IMG/VR virus record: IMGVR_UViG_3300031787_007614
Span: 300,405 to 364,404 of that record
Length of the DNA stretch: 64,000 nucleotides
Reading direction: 5' to 3' (one strand)
Within the stretch, counting starts at the first letter, position 1; every line of letters starts with the position of its first letter. The notes beneath the pieces were generated by a model that saw nothing but the letters and a program-made list of their open reading frames with translations, was not told where the DNA came from and ran no database searches. Below, one piece after another: positions 29,924-64,000 of this stretch. The position numbers were made by a program, and so were the translations under genes.

Positions 29924-30606
29924 TTATAATTATGGGCGATAGTTGGGGCGTGGGAGAATGGGGATCGGATAAAGATCGCAGTTGTTGTTTAACGGGTCCG
30001 GGAATAGGTCAATTGTTTTCTTTGCATGGCAAAGTAATAAATTTTAGTCAGGGCGGTGCTAATAATTTTGAACAACAACAGGAGTTTGAACGGTTGTTGG
30101 CAAAATTCAAACCAGATGACAATGATCAATTTTATTGGATAGTTACAGATCCTTTAAGAAATGTTGTACCTAGCACGTTACTAGAAACTGCTTCAAGTAT
30201 TGAATCTGCCGCACAAGAACTGTTAAATTTGTTTTTTAAAAATATTAATTTCATTGCAACTAGTCGCAATATAACCATTAGGTTAATTGGAGGGCTCTGT
30301 GATCTTGAACCTATATCTTACAGCCATTTAAAAGTGGTTGTTCCAAGTTGGTGCAAAATGCTTAATGCAACTCATACATCATCAATTTTTGTAGATGACA
30401 CAATTAAAGAGCTTGCACCATATATTGCAGCGCATAGGCCTGATTTAAAACATGAATGGACAGAAATAGCCAAAACTGCATTGGACAAAAGAAAAAGTGT
30501 TAAGTACTTAGAATCTTGTGGGCTAATAGTGGCAGACCATCCTTCAAGACAAGCGCACAGATTACTAAGAGATTATTTGTCACCGGGCAACGAAAATGTT
30601 TTTTAA
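29914..30606 (+). CDS. SGNH-like hydrolase
   Basis: MGDSWG block I, NFSQGGANN, DHP. Confidence 0.6.
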   Translation: MFMIIIMGDSWGVGEWGSDKDRSCCLTGPGIGQLFSLHGKVINFSQGGANNFEQQQEFERLLAKFKPDDNDQFYWIVTDPLRNVVPSTLLETASSIESAAQELLNLFFKNINFIATSRNITIRLIGGLCDLEPISYSHLKVVVPSWCKMLNATHTSSIFVDDTIKELAPYIAAHRPDLKHEWTEIAKTALDKRKSVKYLESCGLIVADHPSRQAHRLLRDYLSPGNENVF

Positions 30607-50711: not shown

Positions 50712-51584
50712 CCCATCAAATGGGCTAACATAGCCCATGGCTCTCCACAACAGACGGTTTTCAATATTTTCAAATGCAGGACGAGCATGCATGCTCAACC
50801 ACTGGCAATTGATAATTATTTCATAGTCTTGCCAATGATGAGCGTACTGGTACTTGGGCTGAGTTAGAAATTTGTACAGATAACTGAACCATGCTTGTTG
50901 TCCAGCGTTTGGAACTGGTGTTTTGCCAATATAGAATATTGGATTTTGCATGGGTGACCAATGGATGCCCGTGGCCCCTGATTTGTTTTGAGTAACAAAT
51001 TTGTTAAATCCTGTTCTGCCTTGATAGTTAACGTCTGCAGCCATAGGCCCGTTATCTGTACTGCCTGAGTAATTGTAATAACACATGAGCTGATCCAGAC
51101 TTCTTAATAGTCCAACTGGTGTATCGGTTGCTTGCCTAAGATCGTTTAATGCTTGTATGCTGTTGGTAAATCCTGTGATGCTGCCTTCAGTATGTTCTAC
51201 CCCGTACAAACACAAAGCATCGGGACGTTCTGCGGCAGTTCTTCCTGGTTCGTTGCAGTGCCAAGGCAAATCATCTGGCATGCCAAATAATCCAGTGATT
51301 TCACCGTGGACATCTTTCTTACCAGTGACTCTGATAATTTCTTTGTTGGTTTGTTCGACAAATATTTTTTCTTTGGCTGGAAGATCGTTATTGAGATCAT
51401 CAAACACACCAGAAGTAAATTGATGATATTGATCAATGGTTAACGGTTGCGTGTTATGGATTACAACCAGCAAGTTGGTATAAGGTAGCGTTCTTAATTG
51501 ATCGCGTTCGGTGCTGTTTACATCTAGCACGTTTAGTTGATCTACATGCACTACCCAGCCGTTTGGATCTAAAGTTAATTTCAT
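50673..51584 (-). CDS. TauD/TfdA-family dioxygenase
   Basis: GWVVHV, WHCN, T.F.N...A, Y.HHWQDY.....NQW.SMHAR. Confidence 0.75.
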   Translation of the reverse strand: MKLTLDPNGWVVHVDQLNVLDVNSTERDQLRTLPYTNLLVVIHNTQPLTIDQYHQFTSGVFDDLNNDLPAKEKIFVEQTNKEIIRVTGKKDVHGEITGLFGMPDDLPWHCNEPGRTAAERPDALCLYGVEHTEGSITGFTNSIQALNDLRQATDTPVGLLRSLDQLMCYYNYSGSTDNGPMAADVNYQGRTGFNKFVTQNKSGATGIHWSPMQNPIFYIGKTPVPNAGQQAWFSYLYKFLTQPKYQYAHHWQDYEIIINCQWLSMHARPAFENIENRLLWRAMGYVSPFDGSAIDTGQLELRQ

Positions 51585-51599
51585 AATTGTAATAAAATT

Positions 51600-51703
51600 A
51601 CCGGTTACGACTCCGGTGCTGAACTATGGTGTCAGCCGTTCTGATCTGTACCCTATCACTTCACCATACTTTCACAAGCAGAGGGCTAGGCAGAAAGCCG
51701 CCT
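51600..51703 (-). ncRNA. Candidate structured RNA with pseudoknot
   Basis: Four hairpins/stems plus 7-nt loop complementarity UAUGGUG/CACCAUA. Confidence 0.45.
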
Positions 51704-52324
51704 TTAATCTACATGATGCTCAGTTTTGAAATTGCCGTTTTGCAAGCCAATCCGTCCACCTTCTGCTTCAATGCGTTTGTACACATCTTCCAACAAGATA
51801 GGCGCAAAATCAGTCTGCTCCACACATACGCAATGATACCGCACATCCAGTTCTGTGCCATACAAGATCTCTCCTGTACGGGCATCAACACCACGAGCTT
51901 TCTTAACTCGAGTGGCGTGCAAGTGTCCGTGGATGTTTACACCAAAGCGACCCAAGCTAGATTCATGCACAGGAATGTGACTCAAGATCATTCCGTTCAA
52001 CACATGATATGCTCGCAATTCACGAAAGTACCTGCGGTACTCATCATCACGGAAGATATCATGGTTGCCGCGGATCAATACCTTGTCGCCGTTCAAGCGA
52101 TGTAACGTAGGCAATGCCTTGCGGTTAATAACCACGTCACCCAAATGGTAGACCTTGTCTGATGGACGAACACGGTCGTTCCAACGGCGGATCATTTCCT
52201 CATCCATCTCTGCAGGATCATCCCACGGACGCAATTTCACAGTGTCATCATCTGGGTGTGTAAACTTGCACACGCCAACATGACCAAAATGCGTGTCGCT
52301 TACCAAAAATGTTGCTGGCATCAT
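51704..52324 (-). CDS. Calcineurin-like metallophosphoesterase
   Basis: DTHFGH, LGDV, GNHD, SHIP, HGHLH; AGGAGG SD. Confidence 0.9.
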   Translation of the reverse strand: MMPATFLVSDTHFGHVGVCKFTHPDDDTVKLRPWDDPAEMDEEMIRRWNDRVRPSDKVYHLGDVVINRKALPTLHRLNGDKVLIRGNHDIFRDDEYRRYFRELRAYHVLNGMILSHIPVHESSLGRFGVNIHGHLHATRVKKARGVDARTGEILYGTELDVRYHCVCVEQTDFAPILLEDVYKRIEAEGGRIGLQNGNFKTEHHVD

Positions 52325-52335
52325 GTGCCTCCTTT

Positions 52336-52569
52336 TTATTCTACTACTTTACAATAACGGCACTGAAATGCAAATGCTAATTTTTGATGAGTTTTTCTCT
52401 CACCATTGTCTTGCCATTCGTATTCAATCCAGTCACCGTCTACTGTGACAATTTTGACTTCGCGGTTACTGCCGTCGGCAGGTGCCCAGCGTTGACCGCT
52501 TGCAAGCTCGTCGGCCGGGAAGAAGTGGCCACAAACAAGGTTGCGACCGTTTACAGTTTCAATTCTCAT
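52336..52569 (-). CDS. Hypothetical protein
   Basis: AAGGAG SD; downstream of promoter 52596-52624. Confidence 0.65.
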   Translation of the reverse strand: MRIETVNGRNLVCGHFFPADELASGQRWAPADGSNREVKIVTVDGDWIEYEWQDNGERKTHQKLAFAFQCRYCKVVE

Positions 52570-52595
52570 TTTGCACTCCTTTCTGTTAATGTGTA

Positions 52596-52624
52596 ATTAT
52601 AGCAGATCAGGAATTTTTGGTCAA
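52596..52624 (-). promoter_or_regulatory. sigma70 promoter TTGACC-17-TATAAT
   Basis: Read directly. Confidence 0.85.
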
Positions 52625-53494
52625 TCACACTAAAGTATTAGAAATGTTGCAGTGATCAAAGTTAAGAGCAATGCGATGCACCACTCGATTCTGAATGTTT
52701 TCACAGCGCCATCTTTTGTGAATACTTAACCATTGTTCACTTAACACAATGTCACCGTCTTGCCAATCGTGGTGATATGTGTATTTTTCTTGCTCCACAT
52801 GTTGTCGTAATTTTTGAATTAGGGCATCGCTTTTGTCTTTGTCAAAACCCAGTATCTGATGAATTTGTAAAAACGAAAAAAACATGCCTGTGACACCAGC
52901 CTGGTTGGTGTGTAACAAACTTGGATACCAATTGTGGTTGATGGCATTTGAATCTCGACTGGTGATTGTGTAAGTGTCTTCAGAGATCACCCTAGCATCA
53001 AACCCCATGACCAGTTTTAAATCTTTGATTTGTTCTTTGAGTTCTTGGTCAAGATCTTGATAACTCAAAATGTTGTTGATCCAACTGGTTCGGCTGCCAA
53101 CAGAATCTTTTACTGAATACAACCAAATCAACGGATCTCGGTCTTCACTACCGGTTCTATTGCAGTGCCAATCTAGATCACTCACATGTTCAAACACACC
53201 TGGTTGTCCATGATGGTGACCACCGCCACCTACTCTGACAATTTTACCACGCCCGCCTTGTACTAATTTTGTGCCCGGTGTTGGCGTATTAGCCGGCGCC
53301 ACTTGCTCACATGCACCAATTTTTTCACAGATGTCAACTTCGTCTCCGGGCAAAAGGTGTTGATCGCGTATCACAACCACGGTGTCTTTGGCAGCAAGCC
53401 AAGCAATGGTATTCATCTCTTGCTGTGAAGCAGAACGTAAATCAATATCAGTAATGATTGAAGTCCAACCATTTTCGTGTAGTTGTATTTTCAT
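52625..53494 (-). CDS. TauD/TfdA-family dioxygenase
   Basis: VVIRDQHL, WHCN, Y.HDWQDGDIVL.EQW.SIHKR, RVVHRI. Confidence 0.8.
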   Translation of the reverse strand: MKIQLHENGWTSIITDIDLRSASQQEMNTIAWLAAKDTVVVIRDQHLLPGDEVDICEKIGACEQVAPANTPTPGTKLVQGGRGKIVRVGGGGHHHGQPGVFEHVSDLDWHCNRTGSEDRDPLIWLYSVKDSVGSRTSWINNILSYQDLDQELKEQIKDLKLVMGFDARVISEDTYTITSRDSNAINHNWYPSLLHTNQAGVTGMFFSFLQIHQILGFDKDKSDALIQKLRQHVEQEKYTYHHDWQDGDIVLSEQWLSIHKRWRCENIQNRVVHRIALNFDHCNISNTLV

Positions 53495-54824: not shown

Positions 54825-55262
54825 TTATTGTGCTTCTTTGTGAGCAGCCAGGGCTTTGGTGAAACGATTGGCATGTGAGCGTTCGGCTTTGGCCAGTGTT
54901 TCAAACCAGTCAGCAATCTCGTCTAAGCCTTCGTCTCTGGCAGTTTTGGCCATGCCAGGATACATGTCAGTGTATTCATGTGTTTCGCCATGAATAGCAC
55001 TTTCCAGAGCCTGCTCAACAGATTTGGCACTCATGCCAGTGGCGGGATCTCCAGCACCACCTTCGATCAAGTATTCCATATGACCGTGTGCATGTCCAGT
55101 TTCGCCTTCGGCAGTTGAACGGAACAAGGCAGCAACGTCATTGTCGCCTGCTACGTCGGCCATGTTTGCGAAATACAAGTATCGACGATTGGCTTGCGAT
55201 TCTCCGGCAAATGCCGCCTTCAAGTTTTCTTCGGTACGGGTACCTTTTACAGATTGTGTCAT
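54825..55262 (-). CDS. Rubrerythrin (four-helix diiron domain)
   Basis: [35 protein letters not shown]; GGAGG SD. Confidence 0.92.
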
Positions 55263-55364
55263 GTTTCCTCCTATAGTGACATCACTAGTATATAGTATAG
55301 AACATACCTAAGTCAAGGCATTTTGCTATTGTATTTTTCTATGACGGAGTTTGAGGTTTTTTAT

Positions 55365-55439
55365 TGGCCGGCCCTGAGAGGATCGAACTCCCACCGCTTG
55401 TTTCGAAGACAAGCATGATATCCATTTCACCAAGGGCCG
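55365..55439 (-). tRNA. tRNA-Arg(UCG)
   Basis: Cloverleaf; CTTGT-CT TCG AA-ACAAG; CCA end. Confidence 0.9.
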
Positions 55440-55444
55440 AGAAT

Positions 55445-55518
55445 TGGTGCTCCCAACTGGTAACGATCCAGTGTTTCTACATTACCAATGTAGTGTAATG
55501 CCTTTATACTATGAGAGC
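55445..55518 (-). tRNA. tRNA-Thr(GGU), non-canonical T-loop AUCGUUA
   Basis: CTACA-TT GGT AA-TGTAG; CCA end. Confidence 0.85.
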
Positions 55519-55522
55519 TAAG

Positions 55523-55596
55523 TGGAGCAGGATACCAGAATCGAACTGGTGACTGGACCTTGGCAAGGTTCTATTTTACCCCTAAACTAATCCTGC
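55523..55596 (-). tRNA. tRNA-Gly(GCC)
   Basis: GAACC-TT GCC AA-GGTCC; U73, CCA. Confidence 0.9.
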
Positions 55597-55609
55597 ATTC
55601 CGTTACTTA

Positions 55610-56086
55610 TTAGGCAGCTCGTAAACTCTTAAATCTATCTGCCGCGTATGATGCTGCAAATGCTTCTGGCTTCACAAACGGAATCACATTGCATGTTCCT
55701 TTGATGTAGCCCACAGCTTGCGAGATCACACAACTTGAACCGTATTGTTCGTCTGGGTTGATGTCCAAGTGAACTTCAACTTGACGGCCTTCTAGTACGT
55801 CAGCCAGTTTCAAATACAGTTCTGAAACCTTGTACACTTCGGTCATCAAACGCATGGCAGGTTTGCCTGGTTTCACGTCCCACACACGCTCGCGTTGAAC
55901 TTCGCCAAACAGTTTGCAGCCGTTGTTGCCGTTGATGTGTACCACAATGGCCAACACATAGTCGGCATACCAGGTACCGTCAATTTTGATTCGTTCAGAG
56001 TCGCAGCCAAGGTAGATGCGAGTTTCGGGCGTTTGTTTCTGGATAAATTCTGCTACTGATGCTATATCGAGCTTTTTCATTTTCAA
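55610..56086 (-). CDS. RNase H-like YkuK/DUF458 family protein
   Basis: IYLGCDS, RL..EV..., EVHLDIN, KPEAFAASYAAD. Confidence 0.8.
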   Translation of the reverse strand: MKMKKLDIASVAEFIQKQTPETRIYLGCDSERIKIDGTWYADYVLAIVVHINGNNGCKLFGEVQRERVWDVKPGKPAMRLMTEVYKVSELYLKLADVLEGRQVEVHLDINPDEQYGSSCVISQAVGYIKGTCNVIPFVKPEAFAASYAADRFKSLRAA

Positions 56087-56109
56087 CTTTCAAAAATATT
56101 TATTGATAG

Positions 56110-56186
56110 TGGTACCCCAGGAGGGATTCGAACCCTCAGAATTCTCCTTTTGAGAGAGACACGTATTCCAGTTCCGTCACCGGGGC
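56110..56186 (-). tRNA. tRNA-Leu(CAA), short variable loop
   Basis: TCTCT-CT CAA AA-GGAGA; 5-nt V region; A73, CCA. Confidence 0.88.
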
Positions 56187-56192
56187 ATTTGC

Positions 56193-56227
56193 AAAAAAAA
56201 AAACAGTAGGACTGGCCTACTGTTTTT
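56193..56227. terminator. Bidirectional intrinsic terminator
   Basis: A11-CAGTAGG-actgg-CCTACTG-T5. Confidence 0.8.
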
Positions 56228-56257
56228 ATAACTTGTGTCAGACAATCTGATCATGCG

Positions 56258-56557
56258 TTATTCTGTATAATCTTCTACAGTAAATGACACAGGAACAACA
56301 CTAAAAGTTGAAAGTTGTGCAGTCATCCATTCAACAAAGTCTTCTGCATTTTTTTTGTTTTCCCATTTTCGAGTTACAGTTAAATGGGTGGGACCTAGTT
56401 CTGACGGGTCGAGACCTGCGGTACCAACCACAGTAAAGTCATCATGCCCACCGTCTCCAACAATTTGTAAATAATTACTCCAAGGGATAATAGTTCTTGC
56501 TGTTTCTCGATCTTCTACAGACGCATACACCAACACAGTTTTAGCAACTATAGCCAT
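56258..56557 (-). CDS. Hypothetical protein (start MAIVAK)
   Basis: AAGGAG SD and upstream TAAATA. Confidence 0.65.
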   Translation of the reverse strand: MAIVAKTVLVYASVEDRETARTIIPWSNYLQIVGDGGHDDFTVVGTAGLDPSELGPTHLTVTRKWENKKNAEDFVEWMTAQLSTFSVVPVSFTVEDYTE

Positions 56558-56576
56558 AATAATCTCCTTTTTGTAT

Positions 56577-57350
56577 TTATTGCTTTGCGGCAATCACGCT
56601 TAAATGCCAACCTAGCTGTTGATTGACAGCCTGGCGTTGTGCATCGCTCATGGCAGCAAACCATGGTTCCAACACATAATTTCCTTGTTTGTACTGCTCT
56701 ACATTGTACATAAAACAGTAATCTTGCTTGATGCTTTTGATATCAAAGTGTACGTCCAGCAGTTTTTGTATTTCTCCTTGACTGTAAACTCTGGCATATG
56801 GGCAGTTGTCTTGCGCTTCAAACTGGTCCAGCCCAGACTGAATCATTGCCCATTTCCAACTGTTGCGAGCATACACTAGGAAACGAAACTCCCCATCAGA
56901 TGCTAGACTTGCGTAAGCATTGCTGACCACTTGTTCTACATTGGGATAGTGATGCAATACACCACAAGCATACACCATATCAAATTGTCCTAGCCCTGCA
57001 ACACGCTGACTGTCGCCTGCGTCCATGTGATAGAATTCAGCATCTAATCCCATAACAGTAAATCTCTGCTCACAAAGTTCTATGCTACGACTGCTAAGAT
57101 CAATCCCAACGTATTCAGCACCATGCCGTACAAATTGTTCAGCATCAGATCCAATGCCGCATCCTAGTTCTAGCACCCGCCGTCCCTTGCAGTTTTCAAA
57201 GTCGGCCAACTGCCACAAATGCGGCCCAACAAACCATCTACGACGATTGATGTTGTTCCAAAATTCTTCTGTGCCTTCTGGTGCCAACCCATGCTTTATA
57301 TTACAAGGTTGTTGATCCCAGTACTGTTCTATTTGAGTAATTGTAGCCAT
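56577..57350 (-). CDS. Class I SAM-dependent methyltransferase
   Basis: VLELGCGIGSD, GIDLS, FDMVYACGVLHH. Confidence 0.9.
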   Translation of the reverse strand: MATITQIEQYWDQQPCNIKHGLAPEGTEEFWNNINRRRWFVGPHLWQLADFENCKGRRVLELGCGIGSDAEQFVRHGAEYVGIDLSSRSIELCEQRFTVMGLDAEFYHMDAGDSQRVAGLGQFDMVYACGVLHHYPNVEQVVSNAYASLASDGEFRFLVYARNSWKWAMIQSGLDQFEAQDNCPYARVYSQGEIQKLLDVHFDIKSIKQDYCFMYNVEQYKQGNYVLEPWFAAMSDAQRQAVNQQLGWHLSVIAAKQ

Positions 57351-57388
57351 ACAGTGTATTTAAAAGTCTGTGCAAGCTACATTAAATT

Positions 57389-57465
57389 TGGTGCCCCAGA
57401 GGAGACTCGAACTCCTAAAATTTGGCTTCTAAGACCAACACGTATACCAATTCCGTCACCGGGGC
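57389..57465 (-). tRNA. tRNA-Leu(UAG), short variable loop
   Basis: TTGGT-CT TAG AA-GCCAA; 5-nt V region; CCA. Confidence 0.88.
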
Positions 57466-57476
57466 TTAAATACATC

Positions 57477-57680
57477 ATGCAAACCAAACAAGACTCCATC
57501 AAAAAAATAGAGCGTTTGCTTGCAATGGAAACATTGGGCAAAACGTTTGTGACCAAACAACAACAGTTGGCCTACGAGCGCGGATATCTAACAGGCTTGC
57601 TGGCTGCTATGGCCTACAACGACAATTCAGTCGAGCATGTGGTGAATCAACGCATCAAACATCTTACACCTAAAATCTAA
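57477..57680 (+). CDS. 67-aa hypothetical protein on the strand opposite the tRNAs
   Basis: MQTKQDSIKK...; TAAATA 4 nt upstream; fills a tRNA spacer. Confidence 0.6.
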   Translation: MQTKQDSIKKIERLLAMETLGKTFVTKQQQLAYERGYLTGLLAAMAYNDNSVEHVVNQRIKHLTPKI

Positions 57681-57681
57681 C

Positions 57682-57757
<76 letters not shown>

Positions 57758-57762
57758 ATGAA

Positions 57763-57837
57763 TGGTGGGTGATGAGAGGATCGAACTCCCGACAAACTGC
57801 GTGTAAGGCAGCGACTCTACCGCTGAGCTAATCACCC
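57763..57837 (-). tRNA. tRNA-Val(UAC)
   Basis: Canonical cloverleaf, CCA. Confidence 0.95.
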
Positions 57838-57842
57838 GTATA

Positions 57843-57933
57843 TGGTGGAAGTGGTGAGATTCGAACTCACGGACCCCTTTCGGAGCCGGCAGTTTTCAAG
57901 ACTGCTGCAATCAACCAACTCTGCCACACTTCC
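57843..57933 (-). tRNA. tRNA-Ser(UGA)
   Basis: Long V arm; GCAGT-CT TGA AA-ACTGC; CCA. Confidence 0.95.
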
Positions 57934-57949
57934 TAAAAAATTAAAAAAG

Positions 57950-58100
57950 ATACTGCTTTGCGTTTAAAGGTACTGAACATCCTTTCGGGTAGCTCACATC
58001 CTTCCTGGCACATGGTTCGACTGTGACTAGCAGTCTGGAACTTAATCCCAGCGGCACCTGGATAACGTTAAGGTCCCTAGCAGTTGGGCCCATAGTCAAT
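57950..58100 (-). ncRNA. Candidate structured spacer RNA
   Basis: Possible closing helix ACUGCU/AGCAGU, CC-GAAA-GG hairpin, CTAGCAGT repeated twice; no ORF called. Confidence 0.3.
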
Positions 58101-58127
58101 GAGTTTTTCACACATCTTTTCTAAACT

Positions 58128-58203
58128 TGGAGTAGGTGACAGGACTCGAACCTGCATTATACGGATTTGCAATCCGGCGCCTAGCCATTCGGCACACACC
58201 TAC
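58128..58203 (-). tRNA. tRNA-Cys(GCA)
   Basis: U73, CCA; TT GCA AA loop. Confidence 0.92.
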
Positions 58204-58209
58204 ATCTAT

Positions 58210-58286
58210 TGGTCGGAGTACGAGGGTTCGAACCTCGGACCTCCTGGTCCCAAACCAGGCGCACTACCAGGCTGTGCTATACTCCG
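58210..58286 (-). tRNA. tRNA-Pro(UGG)
   Basis: C1-G72; CCTGG-TT TGG GA-CCAGG. Confidence 0.95.
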
Positions 58287-58292
58287 TGTATT

Positions 58293-58511
58293 TTATTTTA
58301 CTTTGGGTTCTTGACTTTTGTCAAGTTCATGGGGTTCAGCAAATCTTGTGCCGTGGCCCAGATTCCAACTGTCTGCTGTGAAAATTTTTACAGGCTTCCA
58401 GTAACGACTTATGATGTTGTTGACAGCAACAGCCGCCGCCACAATCACTACAAATCCTATTGCTGTCAAAATACTACCAGCTAAGAATACAGCCGCTTGA
58501 TCCATGTCCAT
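58293..58511 (-). CDS. Small membrane protein
   Basis: One hydrophobic helix; fills the spacer between tRNA-Gly and tRNA-Pro. Confidence 0.6.
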   Translation of the reverse strand: MDMDQAAVFLAGSILTAIGFVVIVAAAVAVNNIISRYWKPVKIFTADSWNLGHGTRFAEPHELDKSQEPKVK

Positions 58512-58524
58512 TGTTTGTTCCTTG

Positions 58525-58598
58525 TGGAGCAGGGTAGGGGAATCGAACCCCTCGCTTTAGCTTGGAAGGCTAAGGTATTACCACTATACGAACCCTGC
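58525..58598 (-). tRNA. tRNA-Gly(UCC)
   Basis: TTAGC-CT TCC AA-GCTAA; CCA. Confidence 0.95.
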
Positions 58599-58610
58599 GT
58601 TAAAATACTT

Positions 58611-58639
58611 ATTATACAACACTCAGACACTGTTGTAAA
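58611..58639 (-). promoter_or_regulatory. Internal sigma70 promoter TTTACA-17-TATAAT
   Basis: Read directly; just upstream of tRNA-Gly(UCC). Confidence 0.65.
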
Positions 58640-58646
58640 GATCATT

Positions 58647-58721
58647 TGGTTGCCATGGACAGTTTCGAAATGTCGACCTATCGCTTATCAAGCGATTGCT
58701 CTTCCTCTGAGCTACACGGCA
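58647..58721 (-). tRNA. tRNA-Ile(GAU)
   Basis: ATCGC-TT GAT AA-GCGAT; CCA. Confidence 0.9.
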
Positions 58722-58727
58722 AAAACT

Positions 58728-58801
58728 TGGCACGGGTACTAGGGCTCGAACCTAGAATGACAGAGTCAAAGTCTGTAGTGTTACCATTACACTATACCCG
58801 A
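58728..58801 (-). tRNA. tRNA-Gln(UUG)
   Basis: ACAGA-CT TTG AC-TCTGT; G73; U1-U72 mismatch. Confidence 0.92.
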
Positions 58802-58813
58802 ACAAAAACTATT

Positions 58814-58888
58814 TGGTGGATGTAAGTAGAGTCGAACTACCACTTGACTCCGTATGAAGGAGGCGCACTACCATTATGCTATACATCC
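58814..58888 (-). tRNA. tRNA(CAU): elongator Met or Ile2
   Basis: G1-C72, A73, loop TT CAT AC; identity not resolvable by eye. Confidence 0.85.
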
Positions 58889-58892
58889 ATGT

Positions 58893-58984
58893 TGGTACCC
58901 CCACCGGGAGTCGAACCCAGATGAACCAATTATCTGTTGCTTACGGGATATAAATCCGCCGTTTTACCATTAAACTATAGGGGC
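58893..58984 (-). tRNA. tRNA-Ile(UAU)-like with 22-nt variable arm
   Basis: Loop TT TAT AT, A31-C39 mismatch, canonical T-arm, CCA; 92 nt. Confidence 0.7.
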
Positions 58985-58989
58985 ATGTC

Positions 58990-59064
58990 TGGGGTGTCGT
59001 ATGAGAATCGAACTCATGACAGCGGAATCACAACCCGCGGTTTTGCCACTAAACTAACGTCACC
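58990..59064 (-). tRNA. tRNA-His(GUG)
   Basis: G-1:C73 encoded; TT GTG AT loop. Confidence 0.92.
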
Positions 59065-59153
59065 ATATAGGAACACACTCAGGCGTAGTAGTTCGTTAGC
59101 CCACTAAGATACACGGCTACCACCCGTGTCATTAGTTGAATGTGTTTTTATAT
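59065..59153 (-). ncRNA. Closing-stem spacer element A
   Basis: 16-nt arms AUAUAAAAACACAUUC / GAGUGUGUUCCUAUAU filling the whole Lys-His spacer. Confidence 0.55.
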
Positions 59154-59227
59154 GGTAGGGGCGCCGGGATTCGAACCCGAAATTGGCAGATTAAAAGTCT
59201 GCTGTGATACCGTTTCACCACACCCCC
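59153..59227 (-). tRNA. tRNA-Lys(UUU)
   Basis: GCAGA-CT TTT AA-TCTGC; CCA. Confidence 0.95.
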
Positions 59228-59288
59228 GGTATCTTGTCACTCTTGTCACTATTCATGACAGACTCTCCTTTTTAAAATAAGTATTTGA

Positions 59289-60413
59289 ATGAACAAATAT
59301 TGTCCAAAACCATTTGTTAGTATTCATATGTATACTGATAAAGATCTCAATCCAACTGTTAGGCCTTGTTGCAATTACAAACCTATCAAGCAGTACGCAA
59401 CGATTAATGATTATTTGCAATCATCTGAACTAGCGTCTCTTCAGCAACATTTGCTTACAAAAGAATCATTGCCAGATGGATGCAAGGCATGCAAAGTAGA
59501 CGAAGATAATAACTTGCCTAGTATCCGAAACAAGTATATTAAAGTGTTTGAGCATGAAACCAAAACTAAAATTGTTGACTTGGAAATTTTCCCTGGCAAC
59601 GCATGTAATCTCAGTTGCTTGTCGTGCAATCCTTCTCATAGTACCAAATCAGGTCAGGAATATGCCAAACTTGGATGGATTAAACAATCAATAGTGATCA
59701 ATCACGAAGATCATGCACTTGAAGTTATTAAACAGTTGCCAGACCTTAAATCAATAGGTTTTATTGGCGGCGAATTTTTTGTAACCAAACACAATATTGA
59801 ATTGCTCGATGCGGTTATTGAAAAAAATCTTAAAACACGAATTATTACCAATGCCACTCAACTAACCAAAAAACATCTTGAGCGGTTACAAAAAATATCT
59901 GACCTTGATGTGATGGTTAGTGTAGACGGTACTGGGCCAACATTTGAATTTTTACGCTATCCGGCACAATGGTCAGTTGTGCAATCAAACATTGTTGCAC
60001 TACAACAGGCATTGCCCGGAGCAAAGATACATTTGTCGGCAGTGTTGCAATTTTTAAATTTGCAAAATATCATTGAACTGTTTGAATACGCCAATGTCCG
60101 TCGACTGCCATTTAATGTGATCCCTTTATCTTATCCTGTTTGGCTACAGTCAGAAGTGCTTACCACTCTCGAACGTCAGCAGTTGATTGCAGTTATACAA
60201 AAACAACTAACAGTTGCAAAACTTACCAAAACACAAAAACAGTTAATGACTGATACATGTAGTATGCTAGAAACAATACAGCACTCACCTGCTCAACGAG
60301 AACAGTTTGTGTCTCGAACAAGCCAGCTGATTCGACTGCGCAACATCACACAACACACAATCAACTCAGTGTTTGGTGTGCTAGAAAATTTAGCGCAAGA
60401 AGTTATACAATAG
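59289..60413 (+). CDS. Twitch/SPASM-domain radical SAM protein inserted in the tRNA array
   Basis: CNLSCLSC, GGEF, N-terminal PCC and CKAC; TAAGTA 5 nt upstream. Confidence 0.85.
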   Translation: MNKYCPKPFVSIHMYTDKDLNPTVRPCCNYKPIKQYATINDYLQSSELASLQQHLLTKESLPDGCKACKVDEDNNLPSIRNKYIKVFEHETKTKIVDLEIFPGNACNLSCLSCNPSHSTKSGQEYAKLGWIKQSIVINHEDHALEVIKQLPDLKSIGFIGGEFFVTKHNIELLDAVIEKNLKTRIITNATQLTKKHLERLQKISDLDVMVSVDGTGPTFEFLRYPAQWSVVQSNIVALQQALPGAKIHLSAVLQFLNLQNIIELFEYANVRRLPFNVIPLSYPVWLQSEVLTTLERQQLIAVIQKQLTVAKLTKTQKQLMTDTCSMLETIQHSPAQREQFVSRTSQLIRLRNITQHTINSVFGVLENLAQEVIQ

Positions 60414-60453
60414 CCAGGGACCTAACTCGTCAAGGGAGAGTATGGCTATGTGT

Positions 60454-60531
60454 TGGTACCACCTGAGAGATTCGAACTCCCCGCCCCTGCGTTCGTAGCA
60501 CAGTGCTCTAATCCAAATGAGCTAAGGTGGT
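60454..60531 (-). tRNA. tRNA-Arg(ACG)
   Basis: CTGTG-CT ACG AA-CGCAG; CCA. Confidence 0.92.
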
Positions 60532-60539
60532 GTATTGAA

Positions 60540-60739
60540 TTTGAGAGTAGTAGCATCACTGTTATTGCTACCATTGACCCGTGTAATAAAGCCGGCCGGG
60601 AGGGTGATACGTCACTTGGAATACTTAACACACAGATTGATTACTTAGTTGTGTACGGAATCACGCCGCCCGTGCTTTACACTAGGTTGACCTTCGAAGA
60701 ATCTTCCTAGCGTGTCTTTCTCTTGCTGACACTCTCAAA
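60540..60739 (-). ncRNA. Candidate ~200-nt multibranched RNA
   Basis: Perfect 9-bp terminal stem UUUGAGAGU/ACUCUCAAA enclosing at least six hairpins. Confidence 0.6.
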
Positions 60740-60742
60740 ACT

Positions 60743-60816
60743 TGGTGCCCCACGACAGAATCGAACTGCCATCACAGGATTACAAAACCAGTGTACTACC
60801 ATTGTACTAGTAGGGC
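60743..60816 (-). tRNA. tRNA-Thr(UGU)
   Basis: TT TGT AA loop; weak anticodon stem; CCA. Confidence 0.85.
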
Positions 60817-60822
60817 GAATTG

Positions 60823-60912
60823 TGGTGGAAGACTAGGGAGTCGAACCCTATGACCCTATTACTAGAATCTACAGATTAGCAATCTGCTGCATTACCGTCC
60901 TGCCCGTCTTCC
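60823..60912 (-). tRNA. tRNA-Ser(GCU)
   Basis: Long V arm; TT GCT AA; CCA. Confidence 0.93.
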
Positions 60913-60917
60913 TGACT

Positions 60918-60993
60918 TGGCTCCCCAGCGTGGGATCGAACCACGGACACCTTGATTAACAGTCAAGTGCAACTACCGCTGTGCTACTAGGGA
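60918..60993 (-). tRNA. tRNA-Asn(GUU)
   Basis: CTTGA-CT GTT AA-TCAAG; G73. Confidence 0.95.
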
Positions 60994-61033
60994 ATAATCT
61001 ACTTAGTAGGCACTCGAGCCTACTACAAAAATA

Positions 61034-61126
61034 TGGTGGAGCAACTTGGAGTCGAACCAAGAATGTTTACCACGAGGGGACGGATTTACAGTCCGCCGAT
61101 GCACACGCCATAGCATCAATTGCTCC
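61034..61126 (-). tRNA. tRNA-Tyr(GUA) with extended D-arm
   Basis: GCGGA-CT GTA AA-TCCGT; D stem GATGC/GCATC; 18-nt V region. Confidence 0.85.
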
Positions 61127-61131
61127 ATATT

Positions 61132-61206
61132 TGGTGGACCGGCGGGGGATCGAACCCCGACTAAAGGCTTGCAAAGCCCCTGTGCTCCCATTATCACTAC
61201 CAGCCC
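61132..61206 (-). tRNA. tRNA-Ala(UGC)
   Basis: G3-U70 identity pair; TT TGC AA. Confidence 0.93.
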
Positions 61207-61212
61207 AAATTT

Positions 61213-61286
61213 TGGCATCCCGGGAGGGACTCGAACCCCCACGAACGGTTTTGGAGACCGTCATGCTGCCATTACACCACCGAGAC
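61213..61286 (-). tRNA. tRNA-Trp(CCA)
   Basis: ACGGT-CT CCA AA-ACCGT; G73. Confidence 0.93.
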
Positions 61287-61294
61287 ATAATTTT

Positions 61295-61370
61295 AACACA
61301 CTCTTGCGAATGTGTGTATTAAAACATTCTAAACTACTTAGGCTGCCTGTTTGTAAAGAATGTTTTAATA
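61295..61370 (-). ncRNA. Closing-stem elements B and C (tandem)
   Basis: ACACAUUC-GCAA-GAGUGUGU hairpin, and a perfect 14-bp inverted repeat UAUUAAAACAUUCU/AGAAUGUUUUAAUA. Confidence 0.55.
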
Positions 61371-61468
61371 CGCTCGGATTTTTTTATGTACAAGAACATA
61401 AGCCATCCCCGAGGCCGCCCATTTGTAGTTTAGAGTGATACAGGCTCGCGTTGCCGTTGCACTAAATG

Positions 61469-61496
61469 AAAAAACCCAGGGTTTTTACGCCTGGGT
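61469..61496 (-). terminator. Attenuator terminator
   Basis: ACCCAGG-9nt-CCUGGGU followed by U5. Confidence 0.8.
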
Positions 61497-61524
61497 CCTT
61501 GGGTAAGATACGGTTGTATACTAC

Positions 61525-61632
61525 TTAGGACCCTCTGCCTCCTGGAATGCTATTCATGCGACCATAGGCGTGTGACCAAACTGGTGTCTGGGCAAACTTG
61601 GGTAGCAGTGAACAATATTGTGTTTTCATCAT
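61525..61632 (-). CDS. Putative 35-aa leader peptide (leaderless)
   Basis: MMKTQYCSLLPKFAQTPVWSHAYGRMNSIPGGRGS*; the stop codon overlaps the antiterminator 5' strand. Confidence 0.6.
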   Translation of the reverse strand: MMKTQYCSLLPKFAQTPVWSHAYGRMNSIPGGRGS

Positions 61633-61639
61633 AAGTCCT

Positions 61640-61668
61640 ATTGTACAGTATTTACCTTTTGAGGTCAA
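61640..61668 (-). promoter_or_regulatory. sigma70 promoter TTGACC-17-TACAAT (nested TAAATA in spacer)
   Basis: Read directly; the -10 lies 7 nt before the leader ATG. Confidence 0.85.
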
Positions 61669-61704
61669 CCACTGTGTTAAAGTTATTTAGCCTTTCGGCT
61701 GAAT

Positions 61705-61779
61705 TGGTTGCGGGGGAAGGAATCGAACCTCCGTCTCCCAGGTTATGAGCCTGGTGGTCTACCGCTGACGTACCCCGCG
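61705..61779 (-). tRNA. tRNA-fMet(CAU)
   Basis: C1-A72 mismatch; CT CAT AA; CCA. Confidence 0.9.
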
Positions 61780-61790
61780 ATTGAATTATT

Positions 61791-61872
61791 TATATAGAAA
61801 CACACTCTATGCTTGGGGAACAATTCATTGAATTGAGCAACCACCAACGGGTACGGAGTGCGTTTGTATATA
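61791..61872 (-). ncRNA. Closing-stem spacer element D
   Basis: 17-nt arms UAUAUACAAACGCACUC / GAGUGUGUUUCUAUAUA. Confidence 0.55.
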
Positions 61873-61875
61873 AAG

Positions 61876-62774
61876 TGGCGGACTGAGAATACATCCTAAC
61901 CCAGTAACACCTCGGACATTATTACAAACCTTGCGAGTCTGCTTTCTTCCGATTTCCACTGCAACCATATTGCTATGTATCACAGTCTGTTACCAGTATC
62001 GCCGTTTTTAAAGACAGGCAGTAGTCTTGTCATCACATGCTACTCTACACCATCTATCCCGTTGACCTTTAGAGCCATTCACTGTCGCTAAACAGTTACG
62101 AAACTTCCAGTATAAACAGATTTCACCTTGCGAGTTACGTCTGACTGTATTGCCTTGCGGCTACAGCATTAGATACTTTTCACACATGACCGAGTCAGTC
62201 TTTGCTTTTATGTTAGATAGTGGTTTTGAAGCCACAGCCTATTCCTTAACAGGGAATTGCTCTACGATGAGCTATATCAACCTACTGCGATGTGCTGACT
62301 CAGTTGCTTCATACTCTTTTGGAATACAAAATACAACACACCACGTTCCTTTTGTCTTGCGAACTACTCAGACGTCTTTTGCGATCAGTGTCGGGTCTCG
62401 GCTTTCGCGTACCTCCACCAACCACTCAAACTGCATACGAGCCCTTGGGTGCAACCCCTCGGACCGATACGCTACCCTTTCTCATACCAATTAACTGGGC
62501 TGGTTTTGTATAGAAGTCAGCACCACCTGTTACTTTTCTGCAACTCCGGTTACCCTTGCGGGCCGGTAAGTTACAGCTCTTTCCTATACTCCCAGCGTCA
62601 TTGTTACAACCACCGGTCTTATCAGTGATCGGATCCTCACGGACCTGAGCAGGCTTGTTTACATGAACCATTGCTGGCGGACTTATGTAGGCATACATCC
62701 TTTGGCTGGGTCACCCCAGTTATTCTTCGTACAGCTGGGCGAACCATACTGCACAGGACAATAAACTGCCCTAT
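61876..62774 (-). ncRNA. ~900-nt highly structured ncRNA, GOLLD-like candidate
   Basis: Own consensus promoter, many GCAA/GAAA tetraloop hairpins on the minus strand, long-range complementarities, no credible ORF, heads a phage tRNA array. Confidence 0.65.
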
Positions 62775-62780
62775 GTATCT

Positions 62781-62809
62781 ATTGTAAGACAAACGTCTTT
62801 TGTTGTCAA
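62781..62809 (-). promoter_or_regulatory. sigma70 promoter TTGACA-17-TACAAT
   Basis: Read directly. Confidence 0.9.
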
Positions 62810-62900
62810 ACAGTTTTGGATAAATTTGTTGTTTATCTATCCAAAATAGTCTGTAACAGTTTTCTGCAGTCGTGTTACAGTGGGCAAATAAGTACCCCAC

Positions 62901-63872
62901 ATGATCACTGAAATCTTAACCTATCACCACAGTCTCGACTGGAACATTGAACAATTCGTTGATAGCACATGTCTAGCAAACATTGTTCAGCCACACTGGC
63001 CAATGGTAACTTCTTCCAAAGGAGGATTGATACCAACAAATAAACCCAGCCGAGACTTTTTTGAGCTCAATAAAAAACGAGGACGTCCTACTGAACTTAG
63101 GAACAGTACCATTGACGCCTTGGTCAGTCTTGTGGCAACAAAATTGCATCTCAACGGATTTGTTACGAATGTGGTAGCAGAATGCAGTGGAAGCATGCAT
63201 GCCTTGTACACTGCATCCATGGTGAGCTTGCAACACCAATTACCAGTGATTGTTTTTTGTGCTGATAATTTAGTTGATGACGAACTTCACATGTGGCGAT
63301 TTGCCAGTATGGGTGCATTGGATCAATCCTCAGGAAGAGCATTTGACTCAACCAGTACTGGATTTCGAATGGGTAGAGGCATGGCTGCAATGTTGATAAA
63401 ACATCCAAGTGTAAAATTCAACATGAGTGCATTTGCCACAATCAGCAATTATATCTTTCGTACCAACCCCACACTCATAGCCAATCCAGGTGATGCGCAC
63501 CAATTGGCCAGAGATATTTCTGGCATCAATTTTGACACCATTGATTTTTGGAATGCACATGCAACAGGCACTCCAGTGGGAGATCAATTTGAGTACAATG
63601 TTTTTAATTCTTTAGTTCACAAAGACATACCTATTGTCAGCTACAAAAGCCGCATAGGGCACTGTATCTCAGCCAGCGGCGCCATTGAAATGTGCATGAG
63701 TTTTGACGATTACCGTGCAAAAACCCTAAGACCCAATGTGTTAGCTGGTGATCTCATAGTCAAAGATTCAAGGATCATCGTAGATGCTGTGCCGTTTCCG
63801 GGCAAACGCATACTCAAGGCCAATTTTGGATTTGGCGGCAAAAACAGTTTTTGCCAAATTGACATTGAATAG
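62901..63872 (+). CDS. Beta-ketoacyl synthase (FabF/FabB-like, short)
   Basis: AECSG catalytic Cys, NAHATGT, SYKSRIGHCISASGA, NFGFGGKN; TAAGTA 6 nt upstream. Confidence 0.88.
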   Translation: MITEILTYHHSLDWNIEQFVDSTCLANIVQPHWPMVTSSKGGLIPTNKPSRDFFELNKKRGRPTELRNSTIDALVSLVATKLHLNGFVTNVVAECSGSMHALYTASMVSLQHQLPVIVFCADNLVDDELHMWRFASMGALDQSSGRAFDSTSTGFRMGRGMAAMLIKHPSVKFNMSAFATISNYIFRTNPTLIANPGDAHQLARDISGINFDTIDFWNAHATGTPVGDQFEYNVFNSLVHKDIPIVSYKSRIGHCISASGAIEMCMSFDDYRAKTLRPNVLAGDLIVKDSRIIVDAVPFPGKRILKANFGFGGKNSFCQIDIE

Positions 63873-64000
63873 ATTCTATAGTCAAGCACCGAGAGATGCT
63901 CAATTTATGCGTCCTCCGCTAAGAGTGCAATAGCCGATAGCAGTTATATTAGGATCCGTTCCCGGCCGGTTGGACCCGAATAGCGTAAGCGTCCTTACAC

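What the first reader, a model, noticed from the sequence alone, without database searches (positions are those of the whole stretch)
61876..62809. ~900-nt ornate non-coding RNA heading the tRNA array (GOLLD-like or new)
A near-consensus TTGACA-17-TACAAT promoter fires into about 900 nt with no credible ORF. Minus-strand GNRA hairpins include CCC-GCAA-GGG, GCC-GCAA-GGC, CAUA-GCAA-UAUG, GC-GAAA-GC and three copies of a bulged-U C-GCAA-G hairpin (ACUCGCAAGGU identical at 61928-61938 and 62125-62135). The 3' end CUCAGU can pair with ACUGAG near 62300, and ACUGGG near 61900 with CCCAGU near 62495; the RNA ends in CCGCCA. Size, tetraloop density and phage tRNA-cluster context match what is established for GOLLD RNA, a giant RNA of unknown function. 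I cannot confirm the family by eye.
Basis: partly seen in the sequence, partly recalled or inferred. Interest (0 to 1): 0.82.

Follow-up and report, generated by a model that had tools for sequence, protein, structure and literature searches.

The report
GOLLD RNA of a lake jumbo phage
This stretch encodes a GOLLD RNA, an already described giant cage-forming non-coding RNA of phages. It sits at the head of a jumbo phage's tRNA array and is abundant in lake and river RNA samples, so it is a well-supported new member of a known family and not a new kind of RNA.

Summary
The promoter, the GNRA hairpins and the repeated ACUCGCAAGGU motif are at the stated coordinates, and no ORF is conserved.

The RNA is a GOLLD RNA. 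Rfam RF02032 matches 61880-62344 (-) end to end with 204.1 bits against a gathering score of 150. That model covers only the 3' domain. The full unit is about 896 nt (62772 to 61877) and is conserved from end to end in at least 94 IMG/VR phage contigs, many of them 210-374 kb. About half of its predicted pairs show compensatory changes.

Contigs from three independent metatranscriptomes cover only 61885-62770. A DNA run covers the whole stretch evenly, so this is a discrete, stable transcript.

The internal linker holds a tRNA-like insert (62211-62281, anticodon GUU). Here its T arm is degenerate. In 40 of 55 relatives the same position holds a callable tRNA-Asn, tRNA-Lys or tRNA-Arg(UCU).

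A conserved 17-19 bp hairpin follows the 3' end and is absent from the RNA contigs. It is probably a processing site.

The cage assembly and the biological role are inferred, not shown.

The parts
62804..62809 (-). -35 hexamer TTGACA of the GOLLD promoter
   Evidence: A TTGAC(A/C/T)-16/17-TAnAAT promoter sits 5-8 nt before the conserved 5' end in 16 of 55 aligned sequences, counting the window and its identical twin L025.
62781..62786 (-). -10 hexamer TACAAT. The predicted start is at about 62774-62772.
   Evidence: Conservation among relatives begins at about 62775-62772. No RNA-derived contig extends beyond 62770.
61877..62772 (-). Full GOLLD RNA, about 896 nt
   Evidence: Conserved end to end in 54 distinct full-length relatives at 66-88% identity, plus one identical contig. 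RNAalifold predicts 274 pairs, 141 of them with compensatory changes. Metatranscriptome contigs lie only on 61885-62770.
62345..62772 (-). 5' domain, specific to this clade and not covered by the Rfam model
   Evidence: nhmmer finds it in 94 of the 119 fetched loci. For the subdomain 62657-62471, 98.6% of cells are paired and 37 of 51 pairs change on both sides; 0 of 500 shuffles reach this and slid controls give at most 14. An extra covarying tertiary pairing joins 62766-62761 to 62662-62657.
61880..62344 (-). 3' domain, the universally conserved GOLLD core (Rfam RF02032)
   Evidence: 204.1 bits against a gathering score of 150, E 3.5e-56, model positions 1-416 of 416. Its helices covary.
62192..62301 (-). 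Helix closing the linker: 62301-62295 pairs with 62198-62192. It forms a pseudoknot with the first 3'-domain helix.
   Evidence: 100% canonical in 55 sequences, with U-A to G-C in 19, U-A to A-U in 1 and A-U to U-A in 2. It is not in the Rfam consensus structure line.
62211..62281 (-). tRNA-like insert in the GOLLD linker. The anticodon loop is CUGUUAA (GUU).
   Evidence: Rfam tRNA model 50.6 bits against a gathering score of 29. ARAGORN does not call it. The T arm has a C.A mismatch and a 6-nt loop, the acceptor stem has a bulge, and there is no CCA. The D and anticodon stems covary at 4 of 4 and 5 of 5 pairs. RNA contigs run across it unbroken.
61877..61901 (-). Terminal hairpin of GOLLD with the nearly invariant loop UGUAUUCUCA
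   Evidence: 8 pairs, 5 of them with compensatory changes.
61790..61873 (-). Conserved long hairpin immediately after the GOLLD 3' end (arms 61873-61856 and 61807-61790). Candidate processing site.
   Evidence: 17 pairs, 97% canonical, 6 with compensatory changes. Folding energy -32.8 kcal/mol, z = -3.07. A comparable hairpin lies within 0-2 nt of the 3' end in 52 of 55 sequences. No U tract follows it. No RNA contig lies on it.
61705..61779 (-). tRNA-Met(CAT), first of the 25 co-oriented tRNA genes downstream
62807..62853 (.). Imperfect palindrome abutting the -35 hexamer in the divergent intergenic region. Possible regulator site.
   Evidence: 19-nt arms, 79% complementary, 9 nt apart. Closest relatives have a similar element. 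Its function was not tested.

Best explanation
The region is the gene for a GOLLD RNA of an uncultured freshwater jumbo phage. The window is identical over this kilobase to a 364-kb IMG/VR contig.

Shown here:
- A near-consensus sigma-70-type promoter sits 5-8 nt before the first conserved helix.
- An RNA of about 896 nt (62772 to 61877, minus strand) is conserved, with pervasive compensatory base-pair changes, across many related phages.
- Its 3' 465 nt match the GOLLD covariance model end to end.
- In three metatranscriptomes it is the only part of this 5.9-kb stretch recovered as RNA contigs.

Inferred from the solved GOLLD structures (env-38 14-mer, S. agalactiae 12-mer):
- The two domains fold separately.
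- The 3' domains form the ring and the 5' domains the cap of a closed RNA-only cage made of identical subunits.
- The linker between the first 3'-domain hairpin and the rest of the 3' domain points into the cage lumen. Here that linker is a tRNA-like element closed by a covarying 7-bp helix.

Inferred from anatomy:
- The RNA is made at the head of a tRNA operon.
- Its 3' end is set by cleavage at the conserved A/U-rich 17-19 bp hairpin that follows it, in the manner of an RNase III site. The hairpin is absent from the stable RNA.

Most likely role (speculative): a late-infection RNA compartment tied to the phage's tRNA supply. It would keep a tRNA-shaped cargo covalently held and shielded inside the cage.
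For: - Family: Rfam GOLLD 204.1 bits against 150, full model.
- Conservation of both halves: 94 and 102 of 119 IMG/VR loci, with one 364-kb contig identical.
- Boundaries of conservation: about 62775 and 61877.
- Covariation: 141 of 274 pairs. The formal test on the 5' subdomain gave 0 of 500 shuffles.
- No conserved ORF.
- Promoter.
- Expression: RNA contigs lie only on 61885-62770 in X15, X16 and X18, with depth up to about 880. DNA run X1 is roughly even, about 3-6x, from 59676 to 64000.
- Phage context: 25 co-oriented tRNAs follow. The window encodes a virion structural protein. In relatives, 47 of 49 have a same-strand tRNA within 1 kb downstream and 42 of 48 within 1 kb upstream.
- Cage, domain separation, lumenal linker and tRNAs in the linker: PMC12286853 and PMC12990946.
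- 3' hairpin.
Against: - No experiment here shows oligomerisation.
- The 5' domain, which forms the cap and sets the subunit number in solved GOLLDs, cannot be aligned to the env-38 type by HMM or by covariance model, apart from one small hairpin. The stoichiometry is therefore open.
- Logan contigs have no strand and drop rare species, so exact ends and co-transcription with the tRNAs are not established.
- The processing role of the hairpin is an inference. No nuclease or cleavage site was identified.
- The biological function of GOLLD is unknown in the literature.
Confidence: 0.9

Rival explanations
1. The embedded tRNA-like element is the point of the RNA. GOLLD would be a storage or delivery precursor, and RNase P and RNase Z would release a working tRNA from it when the cage opens (the 'inhibited storage' idea).
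For: - 40 of 55 relatives carry an ARAGORN-callable tRNA at this position: Asn-GTT 28, Lys-CTT 6, Lys-TTT 4, Arg-TCT 2.
- The cultured phage DSS3_MAL1 has an annotated tRNA-Arg inside its GOLLD.
- The literature reports a tRNA-Phe in Mycolicibacterium GOLLD and proposes this idea.
Against: - In this window the insert has a mismatched T stem, a 6-nt T loop, a bulged acceptor stem and no CCA, whereas the three array tRNAs printed for comparison all end in an encoded CCA.
- ARAGORN rejects it.
- 15 of 55 relatives are likewise not callable.
- RNA contigs run unbroken across the insert, both here and in relatives.
- The array already has a tRNA-Asn(GTT).
Confidence: 0.12
2. The cage displays or hides anticodon stem-loops of the Asn/Lys/Arg(UCU) group. 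It would act as a decoy or a protected reserve against host tRNA-cleaving defence nucleases.
For: - The insert's anticodon loop reads CU-NUU-AA or CU-UCU-AA in the 40 relatives with a callable tRNA and in the aligned sequences read by eye.
- The D and anticodon stems covary fully even where the T arm has decayed.
- From my own knowledge, not tested here: tRNA-Lys and tRNA-Asn are recurrent targets of anticodon nucleases such as PrrC, PARIS and colicin E5.
Against: - This is purely inferential.
- Other GOLLDs carry tRNA-Phe or no tRNA at all.
- The linker is thought to face the closed lumen, where a nuclease could not reach it.
- No defence or counter-defence gene was linked to the RNA here.
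Confidence: 0.1
3. The region is only the leader of the tRNA operon transcript, a by-product of processing with no function of its own.
For: It lies between the promoter and the first tRNA. In most relatives it sits inside co-oriented tRNA arrays.
Against: - About 900 nt are conserved with compensatory changes in at least 54 distinct relatives.
- It matches a curated structured-RNA family.
- It accumulates far above its flanks in three metatranscriptomes.
Confidence: 0.02
4. It is a new class of large RNA unrelated to GOLLD, or a protein-coding region.
For: The 5' half has no Rfam match and cannot be aligned with the env-38 5' domain. ORFs of 87-114 aa exist in the region.
Against: The 3' half matches GOLLD end to end, and GOLLD 5' domains are known to vary. 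The two ORFs tested (90 and 114 aa) are not conserved and indels ignore the reading frame.
Confidence: 0.01

Closest known systems
GOLLD RNA env-38 (833 nt, cryo-EM 14-mer, PDB 9MEE; PMC12286853)
   Same: - Same Rfam family.
- Same two-domain plan, with a conserved 3' domain and a lumenal linker after the first 3'-domain hairpin.
- Both lie beside a tRNA-Met: env-38 downstream of one, this RNA upstream of one.
- The two share a small AAC-NGG-UGGUGC-CNG-AC hairpin in the 5' domain.
   Different: - This RNA is about 63 nt longer.
- Its linker holds a 71-nt tRNA-like insert, where env-38 has a 42-nt disordered loop.
- Its 5' domain is not alignable to the env-38 type by nhmmer or by a covariance model. 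The conserved hairpin lies about 177 nt before the 3' domain, against about 75 nt in env-38.
- The subunit number is therefore unknown.
Streptococcus agalactiae GOLLD (700 nt, dodecamer 9L0R; 3' domain alone mostly a decamer) (PMC12990946)
   Same: Same family and the same conserved 3' domain. It shows that the 5' domain caps the assembly and fixes the stoichiometry.
   Different: It comes from a bacterial or prophage setting in Lactobacillales, is shorter, and lacks several helices. The window RNA comes from a lake jumbo phage and is larger.
GOLLDs with an embedded tRNA: Mycolicibacterium (tRNA-Phe in J13/15) and phage DSS3_MAL1 (MN602268, tRNA-Arg)
   Same: A tRNA sits in the same linker. 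The GOLLD lies inside a tRNA array.
   Different: Here the insert is a decayed tRNA-like element with anticodon GUU that ARAGORN does not call. In DSS3_MAL1 the GOLLD is followed by a permuted tmRNA; here a hairpin and tRNA-Met follow.
ROOL RNA (octameric or hexameric cage, phage tRNA islands)
   Same: Same kind of genomic setting and the same kind of RNA-only cage.
   Different: The sequence and fold are unrelated. No ROOL match appeared in the window even at E up to 1.
RNase III processing hairpins of phage T7 early transcripts and of rRNA operons (for the 3' flanking hairpin only; from my own knowledge)
   Same: A stem of about 17-19 bp with a conserved internal mismatch, placed between units of a polycistronic transcript and absent from the stable product.
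   Different: No cleavage was shown. The arms are conserved in sequence as well as in pairing, which RNase III does not require.

Membership tests
GOLLD RNA (Rfam RF02032) | Scores at or above the curated gathering score of the family covariance model, over the full model | tested here: met
   204.1 bits against 150, E 3.5e-56, model positions 1-416 of 416, window 61880-62344 (-).
GOLLD RNA (Rfam RF02032) | Helices of the conserved 3' domain kept by compensatory changes | tested here: met
   The 3'-domain helices are 94-100% canonical, and most contain pairs with compensatory changes across 55 sequences.
GOLLD RNA (Rfam RF02032) | Giant size (over about 700-800 nt) with a separate, less conserved 5' domain | tested here: met
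   About 896 nt in all. The 428-nt 5' domain is structured and covarying. It cannot be aligned with the env-38 type, which agrees with the known variability of this domain.
GOLLD RNA (Rfam RF02032) | Variable linker after the first 3'-domain hairpin, sometimes holding a tRNA | tested here: met
   tRNA-like insert at 62211-62281. tRNAs are called at this position in 40 of 55 relatives.
GOLLD RNA (Rfam RF02032) | Encoded by phages or prophages, next to tRNA islands | tested here: met
   25 co-oriented tRNAs lie downstream. Relatives are IMG/VR viral contigs of up to 374 kb. The window encodes a virion structural protein. tRNAs flank the RNA in 47 of 49 and 42 of 48 relatives.
GOLLD RNA (Rfam RF02032) | Accumulates as a discrete RNA | tested here: met
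   Contigs from three metatranscriptomes lie only on 61885-62770, while the DNA control is roughly even over GOLLD and its flanks. Strand and exact ends are not resolved.
GOLLD RNA (Rfam RF02032) | Self-assembles into a closed RNA-only cage of identical subunits (10-14 subunits in solved members) | not testable with these tools
   Known only from cryo-EM of other members. No RNA 3D or oligomer prediction was available here.
GOLLD, env-38 structural subtype | 5' cap domain homologous to the one in the solved 14-mer | tested here: inconclusive
   Six env-38 20-mers gave no hits in the lake-type loci. A profile HMM of the window's 5' domain gave no hits in 44 env-38-type loci. Covariance model R1 matched only the UGGUGC hairpin. 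The same HMM approach also failed on the homologous 3' domain, so sensitivity is low.
ROOL RNA | Match to the Rfam ROOL model | tested here: not met
   No match at the gathering score or at E up to 1 on 61500-63000.
tRNA (for the insert 62211-62281) | Cloverleaf with a canonical T arm, a regular acceptor stem and a 3' CCA or a processing context | tested here: inconclusive
   Rfam tRNA model 50.6 bits against 29. Against this, the T stem has a C.A mismatch, the T loop has 6 nt, the acceptor stem is bulged and there is no CCA. ARAGORN does not call it.
Intrinsic terminator (for the hairpin 61873-61790) | G+C-rich stem followed by a U tract | tested here: not met
   The scan does not list it. 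The stem is A/U-rich and is followed by AAAUAAUUCAAUCG.

The most novel reading that the evidence does not exclude
This freshwater jumbo-phage clade may be a distinct structural subtype of GOLLD. It has its own 428-nt cap domain, which is not alignable to either solved GOLLD and includes an extra covarying loop-to-strand pairing (62766-62761 with 62662-62657). Nearly every member also carries a tRNA-shaped cargo from the Asn/Lys/Arg(UCU) anticodon group. Such an RNA could build a cage with a different subunit number, with a lumen holding ten or more anticodon stem-loops. That cage could serve as a shielded reserve or a decoy in the contest between phage tRNAs and host tRNA-cleaving defences. 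The flanking hairpins would be a dedicated excision signal.
Probability: 0.15. Interest if true: 0.7.

Novelty: new member of a known kind. Interest (0 to 1): 0.33.

Why it matters
GOLLD is one of the largest bacterial and phage non-coding RNAs, and its function is unknown. Since 2025 it has been known to form RNA-only cages larger than a ribosome.

This locus adds no new class, but it offers four useful things:
- A well-bounded natural example with its own promoter, clear ends, and environmental expression far above its neighbours.
- A large comparative set, at least 54 distinct full-length relatives, that covers the 5' domain missing from the Rfam model.
- A natural series in which the lumenal tRNA ranges from canonical to decayed while the anticodon arm is kept. 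That bears directly on whether the cargo must be a working tRNA.
- A conserved flanking hairpin that may explain how GOLLD is cut out of tRNA operon transcripts.

Each point can be tested with in vitro transcripts.

Tried and rejected
- Close cultured relatives: blastn against 50,697 phage records found only tRNA-sized matches and a 154-nt stretch in DSS3_MAL1. That stretch turned out to lie in an unannotated GOLLD.
- Link to the env-38 5' domain: 20-mer probes, a profile HMM and a covariance model of the best-supported 5' subdomain recovered only one small hairpin. That hairpin was partly used to select the loci, so the test is inconclusive and not negative.
- Coding potential of the internal ORFs: rejected.
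- The 3' hairpin as a terminator: rejected, because there is no U tract.
- The idea that such long hairpins enclose tRNAs: only 22 of 524 do.
- RNAalifold paired 62748-62738 with 62003-61994. I regard this as an artefact. The 5' partner forms a local tetraloop hairpin in relatives, and the 3' partner belongs to an Rfam helix.
- Host: a scan of 185,579 species genomes for a lake-type 5' motif gave one 2.8-kb contig in a Polynucleobacter MAG. This is only a weak hint.
- The original 2009 GOLLD paper could not be read.

Full report
**Observation.**
- The promoter TTGACA-17-TACAAT lies at 62809-62781. It is the best sigma-70-type match in 55000-64000, with 11 of 12 positions. Promoter-like sites as a class are not enriched there: 18 were found against 15.8 expected.
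- The GNRA-capped hairpins, the three UCGCAAG copies and the duplicated ACUCGCAAGGU are all present.
- GNRA hairpins number 7, against 2.3 +/- 1.4 in shuffles.
- ORFs of 87-114 aa exist in the region. Of the two that were tested, 17 of 54 relatives keep the 90-aa sense ORF open and 2 of 54 keep the 114-aa antisense ORF open. Length differences fall evenly into the three frame classes. The region is non-coding.

**Identity.** Rfam's GOLLD model (RF02032) matches 61880-62344 on the minus strand with 204.1 bits against a gathering score of 150, at E 3.5e-56. The match covers model positions 1-416 of 416. Nothing else in 61500-63000 reaches E of 1 or better except two tRNA matches. One is the first array tRNA. 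The other lies inside GOLLD at 62211-62281. ROOL and the other large-RNA models do not match. The Rfam model covers only the conserved 3' domain, so about 430 nt between the promoter and the match were still unexplained at this point.

**Extent and conservation.**
- nhmmer with the window's two halves found the 5' half in 94 loci and the 3' half in 102.
- One 364-kb contig (L025) is identical to the window over the whole kilobase. Many of the host contigs are 210-374 kb, which is jumbo-phage size.
- I collected 54 distinct full-length relatives at 66-88% identity, all 880-905 nt long.
- Column conservation rises from background to above 0.8 at about 62775-62772 and stays high to about 61877.
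- A MAFFT alignment folded with RNAalifold gives 274 pairs. Of these, 141 have compensatory changes in at least two sequences, spread over both domains.
- For the 5' subdomain 62657-62471, the pair-count tool gives 98.6% paired cells and 37 of 51 pairs changed on both sides. None of 500 shuffles reached this, and slid-partner controls gave at most 14.
- A scan for covarying runs recovered the Rfam helices and two elements that neither RNAalifold nor the Rfam structure line contains. One is a 6-bp pairing between the first hairpin loop (62766-62761) and 62662-62657. The other is the outer helix of the first 3'-domain hairpin.
- A 7-bp helix (62301-62295 with 62198-62192) closes the linker. It is 100% canonical, with U-A changed to G-C in 19 sequences.
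- The CCA-like end varies among relatives.

**Expression.** The stretch is held by freshwater DNA runs and by six metatranscriptomic runs. I laid three RNA runs from different studies and one DNA run on 58100-64000.
- The DNA run covers the GOLLD region and both flanks fairly evenly, at about 3-6x from 59676 to 64000. It is patchier further into the tRNA array.
- The RNA runs have contigs only between 61885 and 62770, with word depth up to about 21, 99 and 883. They have none on the ketoacyl-synthase-like gene upstream and none on 61252-61842, and only low depth on three tRNAs and their spacers (60644-61251).
- X15's two contigs (61885-62031 and 62002-751) are identical to the window.
- Illumina adapter sequence abuts fragments at 61904 and 62760.
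- DNA carry-over therefore cannot explain the signal. A discrete, abundant RNA with ends near 62770 and 61885 fits the predicted start (5-8 nt after the -10 hexamer) and the end of conservation.
- Caveats: the contigs are unstranded, low-abundance transcripts may not assemble, and depths sum over close relatives.
- Contigs run unbroken across the tRNA-like insert.
- The 'joints' at 62209/62279 are relatives with a different insert, not splicing. Their loose ends match other relatives' tRNA ends.

**The linker insert.**
- The insert scores 50.6 bits on the tRNA model and has the anticodon loop CUGUUAA. However, its T stem has a C.A mismatch, its T loop has 6 nt, its acceptor stem is bulged, and it has no CCA.
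- ARAGORN does not call it. The three array tRNAs printed for comparison all end in an encoded CCA.
- At the same position, 40 of 55 relatives have a callable tRNA: Asn-GTT 28, Lys-CTT 6, Lys-TTT 4 and Arg-TCT 2. The other 15, including the window's subgroup, do not.
- The D and anticodon stems covary at every pair, while the T stem is only 88% canonical.
- The literature already records tRNAs in the GOLLD linker (PMC12286853; tRNA-Phe in Mycolicibacterium, PMC12990946).
- The cultured phage DSS3_MAL1 carries an unannotated GOLLD (160.5 bits) around an annotated tRNA-Arg, followed by a permuted tmRNA.

**Flanks.**
- Three nucleotides after the terminal GOLLD hairpin, a 17-19 bp A/U-rich stem (61873-61856 with 61807-61790) encloses about 48 variable nucleotides. 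It is 97% canonical, 6 of its pairs have compensatory changes, and it has a conserved internal mismatch.
- It folds at -32.8 kcal/mol with z = -3.07.
- A comparable hairpin lies within 0-2 nt of the 3' end in 52 of 55 sequences.
- No U tract follows it and the terminator scan does not list it. It is absent from the RNA contigs. I read it as a processing signal of the RNase III type. This is inferred, not shown.
- A sigma-70-type promoter sits 5-8 nt before the 5' end in 16 of 55 sequences. In about 19 others, a long hairpin ends within 10 nt of the 5' end instead.
- Similar hairpins recur between tRNAs in relatives and rarely enclose tRNAs: 22 of 524 do.

**Context.**
- All 25 ARAGORN tRNAs (55365-61779) are on the GOLLD strand.
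- In relatives, tRNAs lie within 1 kb downstream in 47 of 49 and within 1 kb upstream in 42 of 48. None is on the opposite strand.
- The window also encodes a 2569-aa virion structural protein, several radical-SAM enzymes and a carbamoyltransferase.
- It further encodes a ketoacyl-synthase-like protein, two TauD-family dioxygenases, a methyltransferase and a MoxR/VWA pair.
- No close cultured phage exists in GenBank.
- Among 185,579 species genomes, a lake-type motif occurs once, on a 2.8-kb contig of a Polynucleobacter MAG.

**Comparison with the known.** According to PMC12286853 and PMC12990946:
- GOLLDs have a universal 3' domain and a variable 5' domain that fold separately.
- env-38 (833 nt) forms a D7 14-mer. 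Full-length S. agalactiae GOLLD forms a 12-mer, and its 3' domain alone forms mostly a 10-mer.
- The linker faces the lumen.
- The function is unknown. Expression rises during phage lysis, ribosomes were pulled down with the RNA, and 'inhibited storage' of embedded tRNAs has been proposed.

The window RNA meets every testable family criterion. Its 5' domain could not be aligned with 44 env-38-type loci or with the env-38 sequence printed in the paper's supplement. The exception is a small AAC-NGG-UGGUGC-CNG-AC hairpin. The same HMM approach also missed the homologous 3' domain, so this result is inconclusive. The subunit number of this clade's assembly is therefore open.

**Verdict.** This is a bona fide GOLLD RNA gene: a new member of a known kind, well bounded and demonstrably expressed in nature. 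The cage assembly is inferred by homology, and the 3'-end processing and the role of the decayed tRNA-like cargo are hypotheses. Interest is moderate to low for novelty. The locus is still useful material for the open question of what GOLLD does.

Noticed in passing
window 61790-61873 (-); also 61314-61373: Long A/U-rich hairpins with conserved arms follow GOLLD. Similar hairpins recur between tRNAs in related phage arrays. A second one in the window (about 15 bp, 28-nt loop) lies between tRNA-Met and tRNA-Trp. They rarely enclose tRNAs and have no Rfam match.
   Followed up: partly
window 59261-60409: The DNA run X1 contains a contig that joins 59261 to 60409 with 21 other letters in between. 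It thus lacks the plus-strand radical-SAM ORF (59289-60413) that interrupts the minus-strand tRNA array. This is a presence/absence polymorphism in the phage population.
   Followed up: no
window 62807-62853: An imperfect palindrome (19-nt arms, 9 nt apart) abuts the -35 hexamer in the divergent intergenic region between GOLLD and the ketoacyl-synthase-like gene. Closest relatives have a similar element. It is a possible regulator binding site.
   Followed up: no
window 58893-58984 and 61034-61126 (-): tRNA-Ile(TAT) is 92 nt long and tRNA-Tyr(GTA) is 93 nt long. The Ile tRNA has an unusually long variable region and a rare UAU anticodon.
   Followed up: no
window 13000-30000, 50673-53494, 56577-57350, 62901-63872: A dense set of enzyme genes sits beside a 2569-aa virion structural protein (24-7733). 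The enzymes are at least four radical-SAM proteins, a Nol-like carbamoyltransferase, two TauD-family dioxygenases, a methyltransferase and a ketoacyl-synthase-like protein. This looks like an auxiliary biosynthetic or modification cluster in a jumbo phage.
   Followed up: partly
window 55610-56086 (-): A 158-aa protein of the RNaseH_like family (PF04308) is encoded inside the tRNA array, between tRNA-Gly and tRNA-Leu.
   Followed up: no
L164 (MN602268.1 5921-9076): Cultured phage DSS3_MAL1 has an unannotated GOLLD (160.5 bits). Its linker tRNA is annotated as a free-standing tRNA-Arg gene, and a permuted alpha-type tmRNA follows immediately.
   Followed up: partly
window 61843-62827, read laying depth table: In run X18 the 3' domain has roughly 5-7 times the contig depth of the 5' domain. 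In X16 the 5' domain is the deeper one. This could reflect mixtures of relatives or differing stability of the two domains. Contig depths are too crude to decide.
   Followed up: no
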